From Ascidiella aspersa (taxonomy: Eukaryota): a stretch of DNA of 64,000 nt. Below, in pieces: positions 17,954 through 23,900 of the stretch. The position numbers and the translations under genes were made by a program. The stretch covers positions 25,606,001 through 25,670,000 of the forward strand of contig OZ004611.1 of assembly GCA_963924565.1 (NCBI GenBank), in the 5' to 3' direction. A model generated the notes under the pieces. It worked only from the letters and a program-made list of their open reading frames with translations. It was not told the origin of the DNA and did no database searches. How positions within the stretch are numbered: the first letter of the stretch is position 1; every line of letters starts with the position of its first letter.

Positions 17954-20900
17954 CTAGTTCGTAAGGCCGGCGTCTTTCGCCATGCCATAGAAGATTCCTT
18001 TTGCAGCAAGTAAGTTTTGAGGTGTGTCGAATTCGGCAACCTTTCCAGCGTCGAGAACCAGCACTCTAAGATAGTGTAGGCGGATATATTAGCATTTAGT
18101 CATGAAAAGATCGAAACAGAACCGCAACGGGAATAAAAAAAAAAAAAAAAATTATTTAAAAAGATACTAGAGTTACGCAAAATAATGTATCATCAGTTTT
18201 GCTTAAAAGCCTAATTTCGAAAGTGATCTTACAATGTGGATAAAACATCTAGCAGTGTTGGAACAGCCTTAGATCCTATAATAAACAATAAATTAATAAT
18301 AATATTATTATTTTATCAACTTAGTCATGAAAATATTCGAACTCTACAAATTCATTCATAAAGATACAGCTTCCATAAAAAAAAATTAATGAACGAATTT
18401 CTAACATTTACAGAAAATAAACTTGATTTTCTTTACCTAGAGCTATCCATAATGGTGTTCAGGCGATGGGCAATTGTGAAAGTGGTGCAATCGGCAAATT
18501 GATCTCGGATGGTTTTCTGAGAAAAAGTTTAAACAGTAAAGAAACAGCCACAAAGCAGATTAACTAGCATACAAACGGCAAAGCGTAAATTAATACTGAG
18601 AGTCCATTTTTGGCATGAGTCGATTTATATACCAAAGTGTTTTTACGGCTACAGCGGGCATAGTTAACAAACTTGAACAAGGGCGATATTCTTGATATAA
18701 ATTTTATGACGGAAAAATATTGAAAGATCAGCCATATTTATTAAACGCTAAAAGGTTGTTGCTTCATATCTATACTTAGGTATTTAATTTTTATTTATAT
18801 TTTACGTGGTTTTTGTTTCCCCTATAGTCATATACCCATACAATCATATATGGAACCCTTTCTTCACAAATAATAACTTTGAAATGTATTATTCATAAAT
18901 AGTAAAGTATGGAATATTCCGCTGTCAAAGACACAGGAGAAAAATAACGAGGGTATTTTACCGTTATTTGCATTCATTCAATAGTCGACAGATAACATTC
19001 TGGACCGAATCACTTATGCAAACCTGAATTAGGTCGTCAGTTTCTAGATCCACGGCGGCGGTGGCTTCATCCAGTACAAGGATCTTTGAACGTCGGAGGA
19101 GAGCACGGGCAAGGCACACTAGTTGGCGCTGTCCGACGCTACGTGAAGAACAAACGCAGTGGTTAGCGGTTATAGCAGCTTGTAGTACAAAAATGGGTTT
19201 AACTTAACCACAGCAGTATGCAATAGTAATACGAGTAAAATTAAGTATATCAATATATAGAACTAATTTTAATGCACCTTAGTGATTTTGTTAAGTGAAT
19301 GGACAAAACCTTTTGATGCCTGAAATCGCGCGTTTTAAGAACGACGATTTATTAAAATAACGACAGTAAAAAACCTTAATTAATAAAAGGGTGTTTTATG
19401 GTATCTATGTTAATAAATAAGGCGCAGTTAAGTAAATAAGGCGCAGTTAAGTAAATAAGGCGTAGTTAAGTAAATATATAAGGCGCGGTTAAGTAAATAA
19501 ATAAGGCGCAGTTAATCGCCCAACGACCATAACACCCCAAAGATGAGTACTATGTATAAAAAATAAAACAGGAGATAGACAATCAAATAAGCTCTTGAAT
19601 AAATTGATGACCGTTGTTTAACTACTGTTCAAGAAATGTAAAAAACGAATGTAAGAATTTTACCCGTTTGTATAAATAAAATTAAATAAAAAATTTAATA
19701 AAATAGTTTCGAAAAAATATGATAAATATGGAAATATCTGCACTGTGTAGCAATAAATTTGTACAGTTGCACCCAACCTTTAACAAATGACGTGCGAACA
19801 AAAAAAAATCGTTACACAGTGGCCCAAACAAGATTTTTGAAAAACGATAAAGTTTCTCTGGACTGCTTTTTTATCCCTTTTGCATTTACCTGAGGTTCTC
19901 GCCACCCTCGGACACAGGATGCTCCAGTTTCTCGGGTAAAGACGAGACGAAGTTGCTGAGGTGAGAATGCTTGAGTGCGTCCCACAGCCGAGCGTCGTCG
20001 TAAGTTTCGAACGGGTCGAGGTTCATGCGAAGAGAGCCGGAGAAAAGCACTGGGTCCTGAAATATTTTATATATGAAAACGTTAAAATCAGTATCCGTCG
20101 ATATGACAAGGGTAACCTAAAAGGACCACAGATCTAGGTGGAAAAACTGATTTATTGGAAATCCAACAAACTTATAGCATTACCGCGCACATCAAATGTA
20201 AAAATATTTTCGTTTGTGTTCAACTCTATAATTATGCATATTATATTTAAGGCAGTTTTTGCGTAAAAAACAAACAAAACATCGTGTCTACTTGTGGAAT
20301 GTTGGAGAGCGTTGAAAACTATACATTATATCTGCGAAAGGTATCAATCGTGCTTTTTTGTAGCTTTACTGTAAATTTAAATACTGCTGCTGCAAAATTT
20401 TTGAAAAAAGAATACTTTTCCAAAAGAGAAACCTGGATTCTAGGAATAATAAATTGTTTAAAACGGTATTTCGAAACTGTGCGGCCGTTCTCACAAGGGT
20501 AAAATAAAAAACTCCCGTGTCTTACCTGTGGAATGATGGAGAGCTTGGATCGTAGGTCGCTTAGTCCCATTTGCTGGATGTTGCGCCCGTCAATCACGAT
20601 CTGCCCCGATGAGGACTCAATGATGCGGAACAGAGCGAGCGTCATGGATGACTTTCCGGCTCCGGTTCGACCAACGATGCCAACCTGAAAAATGTGGACG
20701 AAAAATGATGAAAAATTAAAACTGATGGATCCGATACTGAAGTCTTTATCAGTGTAGAGGAATTTATTAATAGCACAAGGGCTTACACAAGTTGATTGGT
20801 ATCTTAATTAGAATGGAAAGAATGTTATTGAAACAGAAACACATATGAGTGTGTGTCTTTCATTGATTGATACGGACTGATGATCCCCCAGTGTGAAGTT

Positions 20901-23900
20901 GCTTGTACTAACAAAATGTGCAAGTATTGGCGCGTGGTTGTTTCTCGACTCGCTCCTCTCTGAGCCTGCATAGCTCAGTTGGTAGAGCGACGGTCCCGGC
21001 TTGACCGGAGGTCGTGAGTTCGAACCTCACTGCAGGCCAGTTGTTTTTCTGGCTTGTTCTGCTTGCATCATAGATCGACAGATTCGGCGAGTCTGCGATG
21101 GCTTTTCGGTGTACTATTGATACGGAAGCCGTAATCGTTGGTCATAAAGCAACTTCCGAGGGGCTAGATCACAGATGTTATTGAACACATATGTGTGTGT
21201 GTCTTTTATAGAAACAGCATAAGTGTAAGTTAAACATCATCGCCAAACACTTGCGAGTAACTCACAATATTATCTACTACCGCGACACAGTATAGTAACA
21301 CAAACTGTAAAATCAACGCAATTTATAGGCACTTCTATTCAAATGCGCTTTAGCAAACAGACTGTTTATCTTAACGATTGGATTGAAAGGCCTTGACAAC
21401 TGTTACGCATCGTTATCTTTTTGCTGTGGCGTGGATTTTTTTAATAACTTTGTTCGAATCTCTGCGTTTTCAATGTGCACGAATTTATTTGGATTCCTCT
21501 TGGTTTAAGTATTTCATTGTTGCTTGCATTCATACCCTTGGTAATTGCTATTACGCTGTTCTTTATAAATGGATGTATAAGTATATAATGTATATTTTTT
21601 TAAGACTATGGGCCGAATCTAAATGATGTTAAATCAGCCAAAATGGCGACATTGTCCAAATCACGAGTATAAATTTGTATTACGTTATCTGAAAGAGTAT
21701 ATTTTTAGCTTGAAAACAAGTTTTATACCATGGAAGATAAAAATCAATTTCCTTGAAGGACTAATATTGTTATCTGTCCTTCAGTTAACATTTTAAATTT
21801 TTTGAATTACATTTTCTTTCAAAATTTTAAATTGCGAAAAATCGTTTCACATTCGCCTGAAACGCTTTGGATTTTTTACCAGACGTATAAAACACAAAAA
21901 ATAACCTGAATCTGTTTCCGAGTCACTTTTTTTTCACAGCAATTTTACTTTACCTTCTCGCCTCCCTGGATGTTGACGTTGATGTCCCTGACCACAAGAT
22001 CGAGATCAGGTCTGTATCTCGTGCTGTAGTGGTCGAAGCGGATTCCTCCGAACTCAGGCCAGTCCATAGGGGGAGAACGGTCGGCTATTTGCAGGGGAGC
22101 CTATAACGGGAAACGACGGAATTTAGGAAACCAATTAGATAAATTTCAATCCGAGGGGAAAGCCAGTGTTGTAAACAATTTTTTTTGAAATGACTAAAGT
22201 CCTGGTCAAGTTATTTGTAAAATAACCTAAGCCCAAGTCAAGTCATTTGTGCAACTATTCCCTACTCCTAGTCAAGCGTTTGAATAAATAACAATTTAGT
22301 TTTTTAAATAATAACAAGTCGAATCTTAGTCAAGCACTAATGAAAGCAAGTCACTTTTAAGCTAAGTCCTTCTCATAAAAATCAAACGTCTTTATCTATT
22401 AAAATTATTAAAACCGTACGATTATGAGCAATAACTCACCTAAAAAATAACACAAACGCAATATAGCCATTAGCCAATGTTTTATGAGCAAAACTTATGC
22501 AAAAGTGATTTTGAACAAAAAAGGTTAAAGTCATGTAAAGTCATTTAAAAACAGTTACCCAAGCCACTTGAAAACAGTGACTTAAGTCATCAAAACACTG
22601 GGAAAAGATATTCGAAAGAAAAAAATGCGTCAAAATAGGGTTTAGCATTGTGGGACTCCTCATAAAGCTATCATACGAACGCCTTGGTTTTTCACAAACG
22701 CGAGGGCTTACAAATAGAATATTGCTCTTTAGGCGAACTCGATTATAGGATATAGAACCGATCAACTCCAGTTTTACTGTTTTATGAGTTCCGAAACAAA
22801 ACCTCTAAAAATGTGCGTGTTTTGTTGGTAGGTAAATTTGTTTTAAATTATAGAGATTATCATTAAAAAAACGTTTTAAAAGGCGGAGAGCCTAAAAAAC
22901 GTTGGTAATACTGTTTTACACAAACTTAAAAGGGTTCGGAGTGATGTGTGGGCTTTTTAAACCACCTATGGAAATTTAAACGTTTTAACCTAGGGATCAG
23001 TTATTCTCAACATTTTTTCTGGAAGCGTACCACCTAACAGAACTGCTCTCGTATTACCTGAAAAGTCTTCGCGCACCACTCGCGTAACGTGGACCACAGG
23101 TTGAAAATCACCTGGACTACCTTAATAAAGTTGCTTCTAGGAGACAAATGGTGAACTCACCTCTTGGTCAACGTTGGTGTATTCCTCGACCCTCTCCACA
23201 GCCACAATGTTTGTTTCCACTTCACTCGCAGATCGAACCACCCAGTTCATAATCGACGTGATCTGAAAATCACGAAGGAGGGTATTATATTGGAAAACGC
23301 AGTTCTAAAACCGTAGGATAAAGAAATATAATTAGTTTTTTTTCACACCAAAATCAATTTATTTAGGGTACGATTCATTTAATATCACTTTGTAAATCCA
23401 TATTAGTTTTTCCTCTTATCAAAACAAAAATGCCTGTTTTGTTTGATACAATTTCAAGAGTTCCAAAAAACTTAAAAAATTAAAAAAGTACGTAAAAAGT
23501 TCTGCCTTTACTAATGATAAAATATTTCACCTTTACGAAAACCTACTTCGCTTGCATGGCTACCAACAGAAAAAATAATTTGGTTTCATTATTATATAAA
23601 TTGCTATTAATTAAAATGGCGTTTTCTAGGTTATTAATAAAACTAATTAAATGGGTTATTAAATTAAAAAAAATGCGATATTCGAGTTAAACAGCTTACC
23701 TGCATCGCGTAGGATATTGAGAGACCGACCATTCCAGATGCAATGTGGCCTTTCTCGACCACAGCAAAGATGGCGGCAAACAGGACGATCAGGTTGCCGA
23801 CTATCTCAAGTCGAAGGGCGAGCCACCTGTCAAATGATACAGTGGTTTTTGTTTAAAGCAGCGTTTTTGAGTGTGAGCTGTGCACAAAAGTATGTGTCGA

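What the first reader, a model, noticed from the sequence alone, without database searches (positions are those of the whole stretch)
20822..21206. tRNA-like Pol III gene carried as internal cargo of a mobile element rather than as a SINE head
Seen: a full 75-nt cloverleaf with perfect acceptor, D and T stems and a T5 terminator 5 nt downstream. The ~35 bp upstream (ttggcgcgtggttgtttctcgactcgctcctctct) and >100 bp downstream of the terminator are also conserved in other copies (31.4-31.6 kb; partly 26.6, 29.3 and 43.9 kb). Established: a normal SINE begins at the tRNA 5' end and lacks an early terminator. Inference: the unit is copied from a longer transcript and disperses a gene for a ~80-nt tRNA-mimic RNA whose anticodon loop is non-functional.
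Basis: partly seen in the sequence, partly recalled or inferred. Interest (0 to 1): 0.75.

Follow-up and report, generated by a model that had tools for sequence, protein, structure and literature searches.

The report
tRNA-bearing Penelope-style retroelement copy
A tRNA look-alike with its own stop signal sits inside one copy of an abundant small jumping element that spreads the way Penelope-like retrotransposons do, so it is part of a mobile element and neither a stand-alone gene nor an ordinary SINE.

Summary
Window 20964-21038(+) is a 75-nt tRNA-like sequence (ARAGORN; Rfam tRNA, 54 bits) with a T5 run 5 nt downstream. It lies inside one young copy (20837-21210, 1.07 units, about 98% identical to the family) of a ~348-bp non-coding unit. 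At least 3,348 tRNA-like cores of this family are in the genome.

Copies are dispersed head-to-tail arrays of 1-13 units. They have AT-rich target duplications (mostly 10-15 bp), truncated 5' ends, and often two head-to-head arms. The two arms end at two different fixed sites 94 nt apart. That is how Penelope-like elements (PLEs) insert, and young autonomous PLEs in this genome show the same two-ended behaviour.

It is not passive cargo: leader, tRNA and T-run together are the best-conserved block (3 of 119 changes between old and young forms, against 46 of 255 elsewhere).

I found no hammerhead, no base-pair covariation, no PLE with matching sequence and no RNA data. The module's role, most likely a Pol III unit, is inferred.

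The scan had already met this family on other DNA of the same genome.

Verdict: a new variant of a known kind.

The parts
20837..21210 (+). One young, single-armed copy (about 1.07 units) of the ~348-bp tRNA-bearing retroelement. It starts about 26 nt before an internal B-type junction and ends at 3' end B (..gtcttttat).
   Evidence: 98.3% identical to a family unit. 154 genome matches at 97-98% identity. Ends read.
20830..20836 (.). Left copy of the putative target-site duplication GAAACAG.
   Evidence: At 7 bp it is no longer than the best shifted control (7), so it is weak taken alone.
21211..21217 (.). Right copy of the putative target-site duplication GAAACAG.
   Evidence: sequence.
20927..20963 (+). 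Conserved leader upstream of the tRNA-like sequence.
   Evidence: 1 change in 34 positions between the old-copy majority and the young unit. In run X2, 39 contigs stop resembling the window just before 20935.
20964..21038 (+). tRNA-like sequence: cloverleaf with A-box-like TAGCTCAGTTGG and B-box-like GAGTTCGAACC. The box consensuses are recalled, not taken from a call.
   Evidence: ARAGORN; Rfam 54 bits; fold; 2 changes in 75 positions, old versus young.
21044..21048 (+). T5 run, a Pol III terminator-like signal 5 nt after the tRNA-like sequence.
   Evidence: Sequence. Kept as T5-T6 in 21 of the 22 old copies aligned. 0 changes in 10 positions.
21113..21118 (+). Site A (..GGCTTTTCGGTGTACT), one of the family's two fixed 3' ends. 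It is internal in this copy.
   Evidence: Ends of arms. The old copy at 31402 ends here.
21117..21209 (+). The 94-nt 'tail' between sites A and B. Together with the following head it folds into a long hairpin that encloses site B.
   Evidence: Fold -62.8 kcal/mol, z = -3.2, 0 of 200 shuffles as good.
31402..31591 (-). Old copy, arm 1 (unit positions about 92-281). It holds the second tRNA-like match (31480-31554) and its outer end is at site A.
   Evidence: 84-87% identity. Rfam tRNA 32.6 bits.
31592..31639 (+). Old copy, arm 2, head to head with arm 1. Its outer end is at site B (..gtttcattg).
29321..29397 (+). Old fragment running from the 3' part of the tRNA-like sequence to the T-run.
   Evidence: 82-84% identity over 75-77 bp.
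26590..26625 (+). Old fragment of the leader.
   Evidence: 86% identity over 35-36 bp.
23981..24023 (-). Old fragment of the site-B region.
   Evidence: 87% identity over 45 bp.
20481..20690 (-). Neighbouring exon of an ABC-transporter gene (Walker A region), 146 bp from the element and on the opposite strand.
   Evidence: Pfam ABC_tran, 39.3 bits against a cut-off of 25.

Best explanation
Window 20837-21210 is one recent, dead-on-arrival copy of an abundant non-coding retroelement whose ~348-bp unit carries a complete tRNA-like Pol III-type module: a ~35-nt leader, a 75-nt cloverleaf and a T5 run. The element is non-autonomous and is inserted by the machinery of Penelope-like elements (PLEs).

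Shown from the anatomy:
- Copies are head-to-tail multimers.
- Target duplications are mostly 10-15 bp and lie in AT-rich DNA.
- 5' ends are truncated.
- About half of the insertions are two head-to-head arms whose outer ends are two different fixed sites, A and B, 94 nt apart.

Inferred by analogy with the in-vitro PLE work: multi-unit RNA is bound by a PLE protein, both strands of the target are cut, and each end primes reverse transcription at internal site A or B.

The tRNA-like module is the element's conserved core. Its most likely role (inferred, about 40-50%) is as a Pol III transcription unit that keeps source copies transcribed. Occasional read-through past the T-run would give the multi-unit template. 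A role of the fold as a handle for the PLE protein is the main alternative.
For: Family and arrays:
- 154 matches at 97-98% identity, spaced 346-349 bp, up to 13 units in one array.
- 3,348 matches to a 28-nt piece of the T arm and acceptor at up to 2 mismatches, against 0 for the reversed control.

Target duplications:
- 15 of 20 independent young insertions have an exact flanking repeat of at least 7 bp, and 14 of 20 have 10-15 bp. 0 of 20 shifted controls reach 10 bp.
- The duplications are 78% A+T; the window is about 62-64% A+T.

Arms:
- Of 41 insertions chained, 22 are two-armed, and all 22 have their 3' ends facing outward.
- 19 of the 22 pair one A end with one end at or beyond the query's last base (B). 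None is A+A or B+B.
- The B ends of 8 of them were read as ..GTCTTTCAT.
- Of the 3 exceptions, one is split by a 600-bp insert and is B+A overall, one abuts an N run, and one ends at the T-run with an 11-bp target duplication.

Same behaviour in this genome's own PLE:
- Nine copies of a young GIY-YIG element end either at ..TTTCTCTATTT (5 copies) or 34 nt further on (4 copies).
- PLE reverse-transcriptase lineages are many, with open frames of up to 748 aa.

Literature:
- PLE reverse transcription starts at two adjacent internal RNA sites that define the 'tail', both DNA strands are cut and extended, and the hammerhead is dispensable in vitro (PMC11167929, main text read).
- Partial tandems, an inverted 5'-truncated copy and a one-sided tail are PLE hallmarks; Naiad and Chlamys PLEs lack hammerheads (PMC8557442, passages read).

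Core conservation:
- Old-copy majority versus young unit: leader + tRNA + T-run 3 changes in 119 positions, against 46 in 255 elsewhere (Fisher p = 1e-5).
- In run X2, contig depth is 5-7 times higher on 20963-21064 than on the flanks.
Against: - No sequence similarity to any PLE examined: 0 of 10 (2 families; 3'-side regions of 8 further lineages). The partner is unidentified.
- The 'tail' is 94 nt, not the 30-40 nt described for PLEs.
- No RNA evidence: 0 of 7 holder runs is on record as RNA, and all the laid data were contigs.
- No compensatory covariation in the cloverleaf: 0 of 21 pairs, and shuffles do as well. Selection on the fold, as opposed to the sequence, is not shown.
- A T5 run directly after the tRNA should stop Pol III before sites A and B, which argues against Pol III making the template.
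- 5' ends do not cluster at the expected Pol III start. They cluster at unit positions 264-296, which is unexplained.
- The window copy's own target duplication is only 7 bp, no better than the best control.
Confidence: 0.78

Rival explanations
1. Retrozyme-like cycle through a circular RNA. Unit-length RNA is cut out of multimeric transcripts by an unrecognised ribozyme or by host tRNA-processing enzymes acting at the tRNA-like fold. It is then ligated into a circle and copied by rolling-circle reverse transcription, which would give the tandem arrays.
For: Tandem units of ~348 bp dispersed in short arrays resemble metazoan non-LTR retrozymes (PMC7229834, passages read; bioRxiv 10.64898/2026.07.22.740005, outline and passages read). 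5' ends cluster next to site A: 6 of 14 single-arm ends lie at unit positions 277-295. There is a minor excess of inner 5' ends just after the tRNA 3' end and T-run: 4 of 51 at positions 202-212.
Against: No Rfam ribozyme at E <= 10 in three units. This is a weak test, because Rfam also misses the by-eye hammerhead of this genome's own PLE. A hammerhead-core regex that finds the motif in 4 of the 8 PLE 3'-side regions finds none on either strand of the unit. The CTGATGA box of the young unit is not kept in the 7 old copies aligned. Multi-unit copies contain uncut tRNA-like sequences. No RNA data could be had.
Confidence: 0.1
2. An ordinary tRNA-derived SINE, moved by a LINE, whose odd copies are due to twin priming and later local duplication.
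For: It has a tRNA-like sequence with A- and B-box-like motifs (the consensuses are recalled). It has variable target duplications, 5' truncation and 5' inversions, which LINE-1-type insertion also produces.
Against: The tRNA is not at the 5' end: only 1 of 14 single-arm starts lies within 5 nt of it. A T5 run follows it directly. There is no A-rich or microsatellite tail. Arrays are flanked as a whole by one target duplication. The strict pairing of one A end with one B end (19 of 22, none A+A or B+B) is a PLE signature (PMC8557442, PMC11167929) and is not expected from twin priming at random internal sites.
Confidence: 0.06
3. The tRNA-like block is only a relic of the element's origin, for example a SINE or tRNA-Tyr-like gene captured once. 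It looks conserved only because the subfamilies are young, and it has no present role.
For: No covariation. The whole sample of tRNA-like sequences is 96% identical on average. The 19-nt D arm is identical to this genome's tRNA-Tyr genes.
Against: Over the same time span the tail and head regions changed by 23-24% while the core changed by 2.5%. The T-run and leader are kept as well. Variants carrying 2-3 tandem cores per unit have arisen and spread: 19 exact pattern matches, L086-L089.
Confidence: 0.06

Closest known systems
Penelope-like elements (Penelope/Poseidon, Neptune, Naiad, Chlamys) and their non-autonomous derivatives such as MRC1 of Chlamydomonas
   Same: The insertion anatomy is the same: partial or multiple head-to-tail copies, an adjacent inverted 5'-truncated copy, variable target duplications in AT-rich DNA, and two alternative 3' ends with the extension on one side only (PMC8557442 passages; PMC11167929 main text). 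Naiad and Chlamys also lack canonical hammerheads.
   Different: There is no coding capacity. No sequence is shared with any of the 10 PLE regions examined, whereas non-autonomous Chlamys elements share their 3' ends with autonomous ones. The tail is 94 nt rather than 30-40 nt. The core is a tRNA-like Pol III-type module, which none of the PLE papers I read mentions.
Sm-alpha / Sj-alpha SINE-like elements of schistosomes
   Same: They are a short repeated unit that carries a tRNA-like sequence. 2,342 of 2,368 predicted tRNA-Gln 'genes' of S. mansoni are Sm-alpha (PMC2770079, passages read). From recall of Ferbeyre et al. 1998, which is not held in the library: the unit is ~335 bp, found both dispersed and in tandem, with a Pol III-type promoter.
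   Different: Sm-alpha carries an active hammerhead ribozyme. No hammerhead core is present here. I could not compare where the tRNA part sits in the Sm-alpha unit.
Metazoan non-LTR retrozymes
   Same: They are tandem units of a few hundred bp and are thought to be non-autonomous derivatives of PLEs (PMC7229834 passages; bioRxiv 10.64898/2026.07.22.740005 outline and passages).
   Different: A type I hammerhead in every unit defines them and is absent here. Their circular RNA is documented, whereas it is untested here. That preprint does not mention tRNA (0 occurrences).
TRIMp3 elements (Cassandra, Helenus, Ajax)
   Same: A small-RNA-gene-derived Pol III module (5S or tRNA-like), with conserved promoter and terminator, is carried inside a non-autonomous retroelement that is not a SINE (PMC10886601, passages read).
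   Different: Those are LTR retrotransposons with fixed 4-5-bp target duplications, a primer-binding site and a polypurine tract. This element uses a PLE-type insertion.
Classical tRNA-derived SINE
   Same: A tRNA-related sequence with A- and B-box-like motifs in a short non-autonomous retroelement.
   Different: A SINE's tRNA part is the 5' head, it has no early terminator, and it ends in a LINE-like or A-rich tail. None of these holds here.

Membership tests
PLE-type (Penelope-like) insertion, non-autonomous | Head-to-tail partial or multiple tandem copies inserted as one unit | tested here: met
   Arrays of 1-13 units with 346-349-bp spacing at dispersed loci. Each array is flanked by one target duplication.
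PLE-type (Penelope-like) insertion, non-autonomous | Adjacent inverted 5'-truncated copy, giving two arms with their 3' ends outward | tested here: met
   22 of 41 insertions. All 22 are minus-then-plus, meaning the 3' ends face outward.
PLE-type (Penelope-like) insertion, non-autonomous | Two alternative 3' ends, with the 'tail' extension present at one end only | tested here: met
   19 of 22 two-armed insertions pair one A end with one B end, and none is A+A or B+B. 8 were read at sequence level. The tail is 94 nt, against 30-40 nt in the literature and 34 nt in this genome's own PLE.
PLE-type (Penelope-like) insertion, non-autonomous | Variable-length target duplication, AT-rich target | tested here: met
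   15 of 20 insertions have at least 7 bp and 14 of 20 have 10-15 bp. 0 of 20 controls reach 10 bp. The duplications are 78% A+T.
PLE-type (Penelope-like) insertion, non-autonomous | Sequence shared with an autonomous PLE (3' end or pLTR) | tested here: not met
   0 of 10 PLE regions show similarity. Many lineages were not examined.
PLE-type (Penelope-like) insertion, non-autonomous | Autonomous PLEs with RT and GIY-YIG present and young in the same genome | tested here: met
   25 GIY-YIG matches. Copies are 96-99% alike. Open frames of 748 + 293 aa lie in a tandem array. 62 RT matches in several lineages.
Non-LTR retrozyme | Type I hammerhead ribozyme in each unit | tested here: not met
   No ribozyme family at E <= 10. 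This is a weak test, because the positive control failed. A core-motif regex finds none on either strand of the unit; a stricter form (CGAAA) finds it in 4 of 8 PLE 3'-side regions.
Non-LTR retrozyme | Unit-length circular RNA | not testable with these tools
   No RNA run is on record. The laid runs were contigs.
tRNA-derived SINE | tRNA-related head at the element's 5' end | tested here: not met
   1 of 14 determinable single-arm 5' ends lies within 5 nt of the tRNA start; 6 of 14 lie at unit positions 277-295.
tRNA-derived SINE | No Pol III terminator before the 3' end; LINE-like or A-rich tail | tested here: not met
   T5 lies 5 nt after the tRNA. The ends are ..GGTGTACT and ..GTCTTTCAT, with no A-rich tail.
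Functional tRNA gene | Canonical anticodon loop (U33, purine 37) and a fixed anticodon | tested here: not met
   The loop is CCGGCTT (C33, T37). Variants CCGGTAT and CCGTCTT occur in other subfamilies. ARAGORN names them Ala, Thr or Asp accordingly. The rule for positions 33 and 37 is recalled.
Functional tRNA gene | Cloverleaf recognised by tRNA finders | tested here: met
   ARAGORN; Rfam 54 bits. tRNAscan-SE was not available.

The most novel reading that the evidence does not exclude
The leader-tRNA-T-run block is a working Pol III gene that the element depends on. This would make the family the first Pol III-driven ('p3') non-autonomous partner of Penelope-like elements, one that has replaced the hammerhead-bearing pseudo-LTR. 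Its templates would be Pol III read-through RNAs that end at the next unit's T-run. The tRNA fold would then sit about 100 nt 3' of start site B, where the telomerase-related PLE protein needs its binding motif. One insertion, with a clean 11-bp target duplication, has an arm that ends exactly at the T-run after reading through an earlier one. Variants with 2-3 tandem cores have also spread.
Probability: 0.25. Interest if true: 0.75.

Novelty: new variant of a known kind. Interest (0 to 1): 0.5.

Why it matters
Penelope-like elements are the least understood class of retrotransposons. Their known small dependants (retrozymes, Sm-alpha) are defined by a hammerhead ribozyme. This is a very successful dependant: at least 3,348 cores, with copies 97-98% alike. 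It has no hammerhead, and its best-kept part is a complete tRNA-type Pol III module.

It matters for three reasons:
- It gives a natural test case for what a PLE protein really needs in its template. There are two clean internal start sites 94 nt apart, in a 348-nt RNA that could be used directly in the published in-vitro assay.
- It extends the idea of small-RNA-gene promoters carried by retroelements that are not SINEs from LTR elements (TRIMp3) to PLEs.
- For annotation, thousands of 'tRNA-Ala/Thr/Asp' calls in this genome are element cores, not genes.

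Tried and rejected
Ribozymes. An Rfam scan at E <= 10 over three tandem units found only tRNA. When I checked the test itself, Rfam also failed on the by-eye CTGATGA..CGAAA hammerhead of this genome's own PLE and on the small element at 40.8 kb. The Rfam blank is therefore weak. I rely instead on a core-motif regex and on the fact that CTGATGA is not kept in the old copies.

Partner. blastn (word size 7) and local alignment of the unit against two PLE families and against the 3'-side regions of 8 further PLE lineages gave only chance-level matches. 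A shared ATACGG a few nt after the start sites of both the element and PLE family 1 was noticed after the fact and not pursued.

Covariation. 30 distinct tRNA-like sequences gave 0 double-sided changes. The only changes are C-G/U-G and A-U/G-U at three acceptor pairs, and that is not significant by my own count. Only sequence conservation is shown.

Expression. No RNA run is on record. The contigs laid cannot show RNA ends. The joints that skip 454-470 bp around the copy in X2 have only 25-29 nt on the shorter side and lie in another repeat, so I do not read them as an empty site.

Parent tRNA. The D arm (19 nt) is identical to this genome's intron-bearing tRNA-Tyr genes, but the acceptor and anticodon arms differ. 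By design I looked only at sequences with that D arm, so the origin stays open.

Rejected readings:
- Helitron or other rolling-circle DNA element: these make no target duplications.
- DDE-type MITE or foldback element: target-duplication length varies from 7 to 15 bp, and the 'inverted repeats' have variable inner ends.
- Plain satellite: arrays are dispersed, short, and each is flanked by one duplication.
- The tail as a separate element: it never occurs alone in the loci seen.

Limits. Supplementary files of the papers were closed. Fig. S1-S2 of PMC11167929 (genomic tail ends) may bear on the comparison of tail lengths. Ferbeyre et al. 1998 is not held and is cited from recall and from the reference list of PMC2770079. 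The organism was not determined.

Full report
OBSERVATION. ARAGORN finds a single tRNA-like gene in the 64-kb window, at 20964-21038(+), and calls it Ala-GGC. Rfam's tRNA model scores it 54.0 bits against a cut-off of 29. Rfam's only other match in the window is a weaker one, 32.6 bits, at 31480-31554(-). Read from the sequence and the fold, the acceptor (7 bp), D (4 bp) and anticodon (5 bp) stems are perfect. A GTGAG/CTCAC T stem is available, although the minimum-energy fold draws that arm in another register. The 7-nt anticodon loop CCGGCTT has C at position 33 and T at 37. A T5 run lies at 21044-21048, 5 nt after the last base. 20927-21116 matches 31591-31402 at 84% over 191 bp. Shorter pieces match at 29.3 and 26.6 kb. 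The 43.9-kb piece is weak.

WHAT THE UNIT IS. The query 20822-21206 has 154 matches in the window's own genome at 97-98% identity. Many of them are spaced 346-349 bp apart on one strand, in arrays of up to 13 units. A 28-nt piece of the T arm and acceptor occurs 3,348 times at up to 2 mismatches (1,708 forward and 1,640 reverse; reversed control 0). The tRNA-like sequence is therefore part of a ~348-bp unit that forms short tandem arrays scattered over all large contigs. The window copy is one such insertion: 20837-21210, 1.07 units, 98.3% identical to a family unit. It lies 146 bp from an ABC-transporter exon on the other strand.

HOW COPIES ARE INSERTED. Among 20 independent young insertions, 15 have an exact direct repeat of at least 7 bp at the two outer borders, and 14 have 10-15 bp. 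No control with the right border shifted by 200 bp reaches 10 bp. The repeats are 78% A+T. Whole arrays were therefore inserted as single events, with a variable target duplication.

On the unit's plus strand there are two fixed 3' ends:
- Site A is ..GGCTTTTCGGTGTAC(T), at window 21113-21118.
- Site B is ..GTGTCTTTCAT, 94 nt further on.
In the unit, both are followed by (T)TGATACGGA.

I chained the rows into 41 insertions. Eighteen are single arms: 12 end at the query's last base (consistent with B) and 6 end at A. Twenty-two are two arms lying head to head with both 3' ends facing outward. One is complex. Of the 22 two-armed insertions, 19 combine one A end with one B-side end. None is A+A or B+B. 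For 8 of them I read both ends in the sequence. For the other 11 the B side is inferred, because the query stopped 4 nt short of B.

The three exceptions are explained as follows:
- One is an insertion interrupted by about 600 bp, and it is B+A overall.
- One arm abuts an N run and cannot be judged.
- One arm ends exactly at the T-run (see below).

Inner ends vary, which is 5' truncation, but they cluster. Six of 14 determinable single-arm 5' ends lie at unit positions 277-295, right after site A. The old copy in the window, 31402-31639, has the same build: one arm ends at A and the other at B.

COMPARISON WITH PLEs. This anatomy is what is described for Penelope-like elements: partial tandems, an adjacent inverted 5'-truncated copy, and a short extension ('tail') at one end only (PMC8557442, passages). 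It has a biochemical explanation. A purified PLE protein cuts and extends both DNA strands. It starts reverse transcription at two adjacent sites inside the RNA, and the tail is the sequence between them. The hammerhead is not needed in vitro (PMC11167929, main text read).

The same genome provides a control. A young family with a GIY-YIG domain (copies 96-99% alike) ends either at ..TTTCTCTATTT (5 of 9 copies) or 34 nt further on (4 of 9 copies). PLEs are diverse here: 62 reverse-transcriptase matches, several lineages at 36-48% amino-acid identity, and open frames of 748 + 293 aa in a tandem array. I therefore file the element as a non-autonomous retroelement inserted by PLE machinery. It has two deviations. 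Its tail is 94 nt rather than 30-40 nt. It shares no detectable sequence with any of the 10 PLE regions I examined, so the partner is not identified.

THE tRNA-LIKE MODULE. I collected 21 older copies, 82-92% identical to the young unit.
- Per-site divergence among them is 0.040 in the tRNA against 0.061 in the flanks (Fisher p = 0.003).
- Comparing the old-copy majority with the young unit region by region gives: leader 1 of 34, tRNA 2 of 75, stretch to the T-run 0 of 10. The other regions give: pre-leader 4 of 35, trailer 6 of 68, tail 20 of 85, head 16 of 67.
- That is 3 of 119 against 46 of 255 (p = 1e-5). The tail and head figures rest on only 7 old copies.
- The T-run is kept as T5-T6 in 21 of the 22 old copies aligned.
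- In contigs of another run (X2), similarity to the window typically begins at 20935 and stops at 21048-21050. Contig depth is 5-7 times higher over 20963-21064 than over the unit's ends.

The conserved block therefore coincides with a complete Pol III-type gene: leader, A- and B-box-bearing cloverleaf, and terminator.

There is no evidence that the fold itself is under selection. In 30 distinct sequences, 0 of 21 pairs show a double-sided change, and column shuffles do as well. The only recurrent changes are C-G/U-G and A-U/G-U at acceptor pairs 2-73, 6-69 and 7-68. The anticodon loop varies among subfamilies (CCGGCTT, CCGGTAT, CCGTCTT), so it is not decoding. Variants with 2-3 tandem leader+tRNA cores (137-140-bp internal period) inside otherwise normal units exist at several loci (19 exact pattern matches).

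MECHANISM: SHOWN AND INFERRED.
Shown: RNA-mediated, array-wise insertion with PLE-type signatures; the internal position of the tRNA-like module; and its sequence conservation.
Inferred:
(i) A PLE protein starts cDNA at A or B on multi-unit RNA.
(ii) Site B lies in the apical part of a long hairpin (-62.8 kcal/mol, z = -3.2, 0 of 200 shuffles). The two strands of that hairpin differ between old and young subfamilies in ways that mostly keep pairing (read by eye; two subfamilies only).
(iii) The module acts as a Pol III unit.

Against (iii) as the source of the template: the T5 should stop Pol III before A and B, and 5' ends do not cluster at the expected start.

In favour of some Pol III-terminated templates there is one insertion with an 11-bp duplication (TTCAAGGATCA). 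One of its arms ends exactly at the T-run, after running through one complete upstream unit. The inner end of its other arm begins right after the T-run. This is a single case.

WHAT COULD NOT BE SHOWN. Whether any RNA is made: none of the 7 runs holding the sequence is on record as RNA, and all the laid data were contigs. Whether a ribozyme exists: Rfam finds none, but it also misses the PLE's own hammerhead-like motif. A core-motif regex that finds the motif in 4 of 8 PLE 3'-side regions finds none in the unit. The origin of the tRNA part is also open: its D arm equals that of this genome's tRNA-Tyr genes, but its other arms do not.

NOVELTY AND VERDICT. The papers I searched and read describe three related things:
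- hammerhead-bearing dependants of PLEs (retrozymes; Sm-alpha, which also has a tRNA-like part: PMC2770079 passages);
- hammerhead-less PLE clades (PMC8557442);
- Pol III modules inside non-autonomous LTR elements (PMC10886601).
Three searches listed no paper on a tRNA-bearing, hammerhead-less PLE dependant. That is not proof that none exists. Earlier notes of this scan describe the same family on other pieces of this genome and reach the same classification. I formed my reading before seeing them, and I tested their claims here. The claim that the fold is kept by selection is not borne out by my covariation count.

The finding is a real, well-explained copy of an interesting family. I class it as a new variant of a known kind, with interest 0.5.

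Noticed in passing
G000:C1:26191580-26206200 (L071 = C1:26191580-26192120): About 60 of the listed matches (of 514 in the genome) fall here, spaced 159 bp or multiples of it. The unit is an intron-bearing tRNA-Tyr(GTA)-like sequence whose 3' acceptor strand is decayed. It looks like a satellite derived from tRNA-Tyr; ARAGORN calls no gene in L071.
   Followed up: partly
G000:C1:6380300-6410400 (L072, L073): Arrays of intact-looking, intron-containing tRNA-Tyr genes spaced about 300 bp apart. ARAGORN miscalls them Leu-TAG. Their 19-nt D arm is identical to that of the element's tRNA-like part.
   Followed up: partly
L086-L089 (for example G000:C3:35747500-35748800): Variants of the element with 2-3 tandem leader+tRNA cores (137-140-bp internal period) inside one unit. 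There are 19 exact pattern matches, several of them within 0.6 Mb of contig starts.
   Followed up: partly
L090 = G000:C6:23397590-23398480: A two-armed insertion with an 11-bp target duplication. One arm ends exactly at the T-run after the tRNA-like sequence, and the other arm's inner end starts right after it.
   Followed up: partly
L033-L042; L043 = G000:C2:30626001-30636000: Young autonomous Penelope-like elements. Family 1 has two 3' ends 34 nt apart and a CTGATGA..CGAAA motif. Family 2 is a tandem array with a 3,422-bp period and open frames of 748 + 293 aa. Many further RT lineages exist.
   Followed up: partly
G000:C11 (25 kb) and C35 (42 kb); L049, L050: Small contigs with bacterial-looking open frames (a 571-aa GIY-YIG frame that I read as UvrC-like, and others). 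They are probably a symbiont or a contaminant in the assembly.
   Followed up: no
window 40811-41150: A small element with inverted arms and, on the minus strand, a CTGAAGA..CGAAAC hammerhead-like motif (first-reader notes s1-801664 and s1-802068). Rfam finds no ribozyme there at E <= 1.
   Followed up: partly
window 56843-58414 (+): A 523-aa open frame with a weak DUF4371 hit, below Pfam's cut-off.
   Followed up: no
window 20708-20809: Very high contig depth in run X2 just left of the element, so another repeat adjoins the copy.
   Followed up: no
runs X1-X7; X4 and X5: Runs filed under five organism codes hold the unit. In X4 and X5 it appears as one 378-nt contig laid as two pieces that overlap by 30 nt, differing from the window at 4 letters, which fits a collapsed tandem array.
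   Followed up: no
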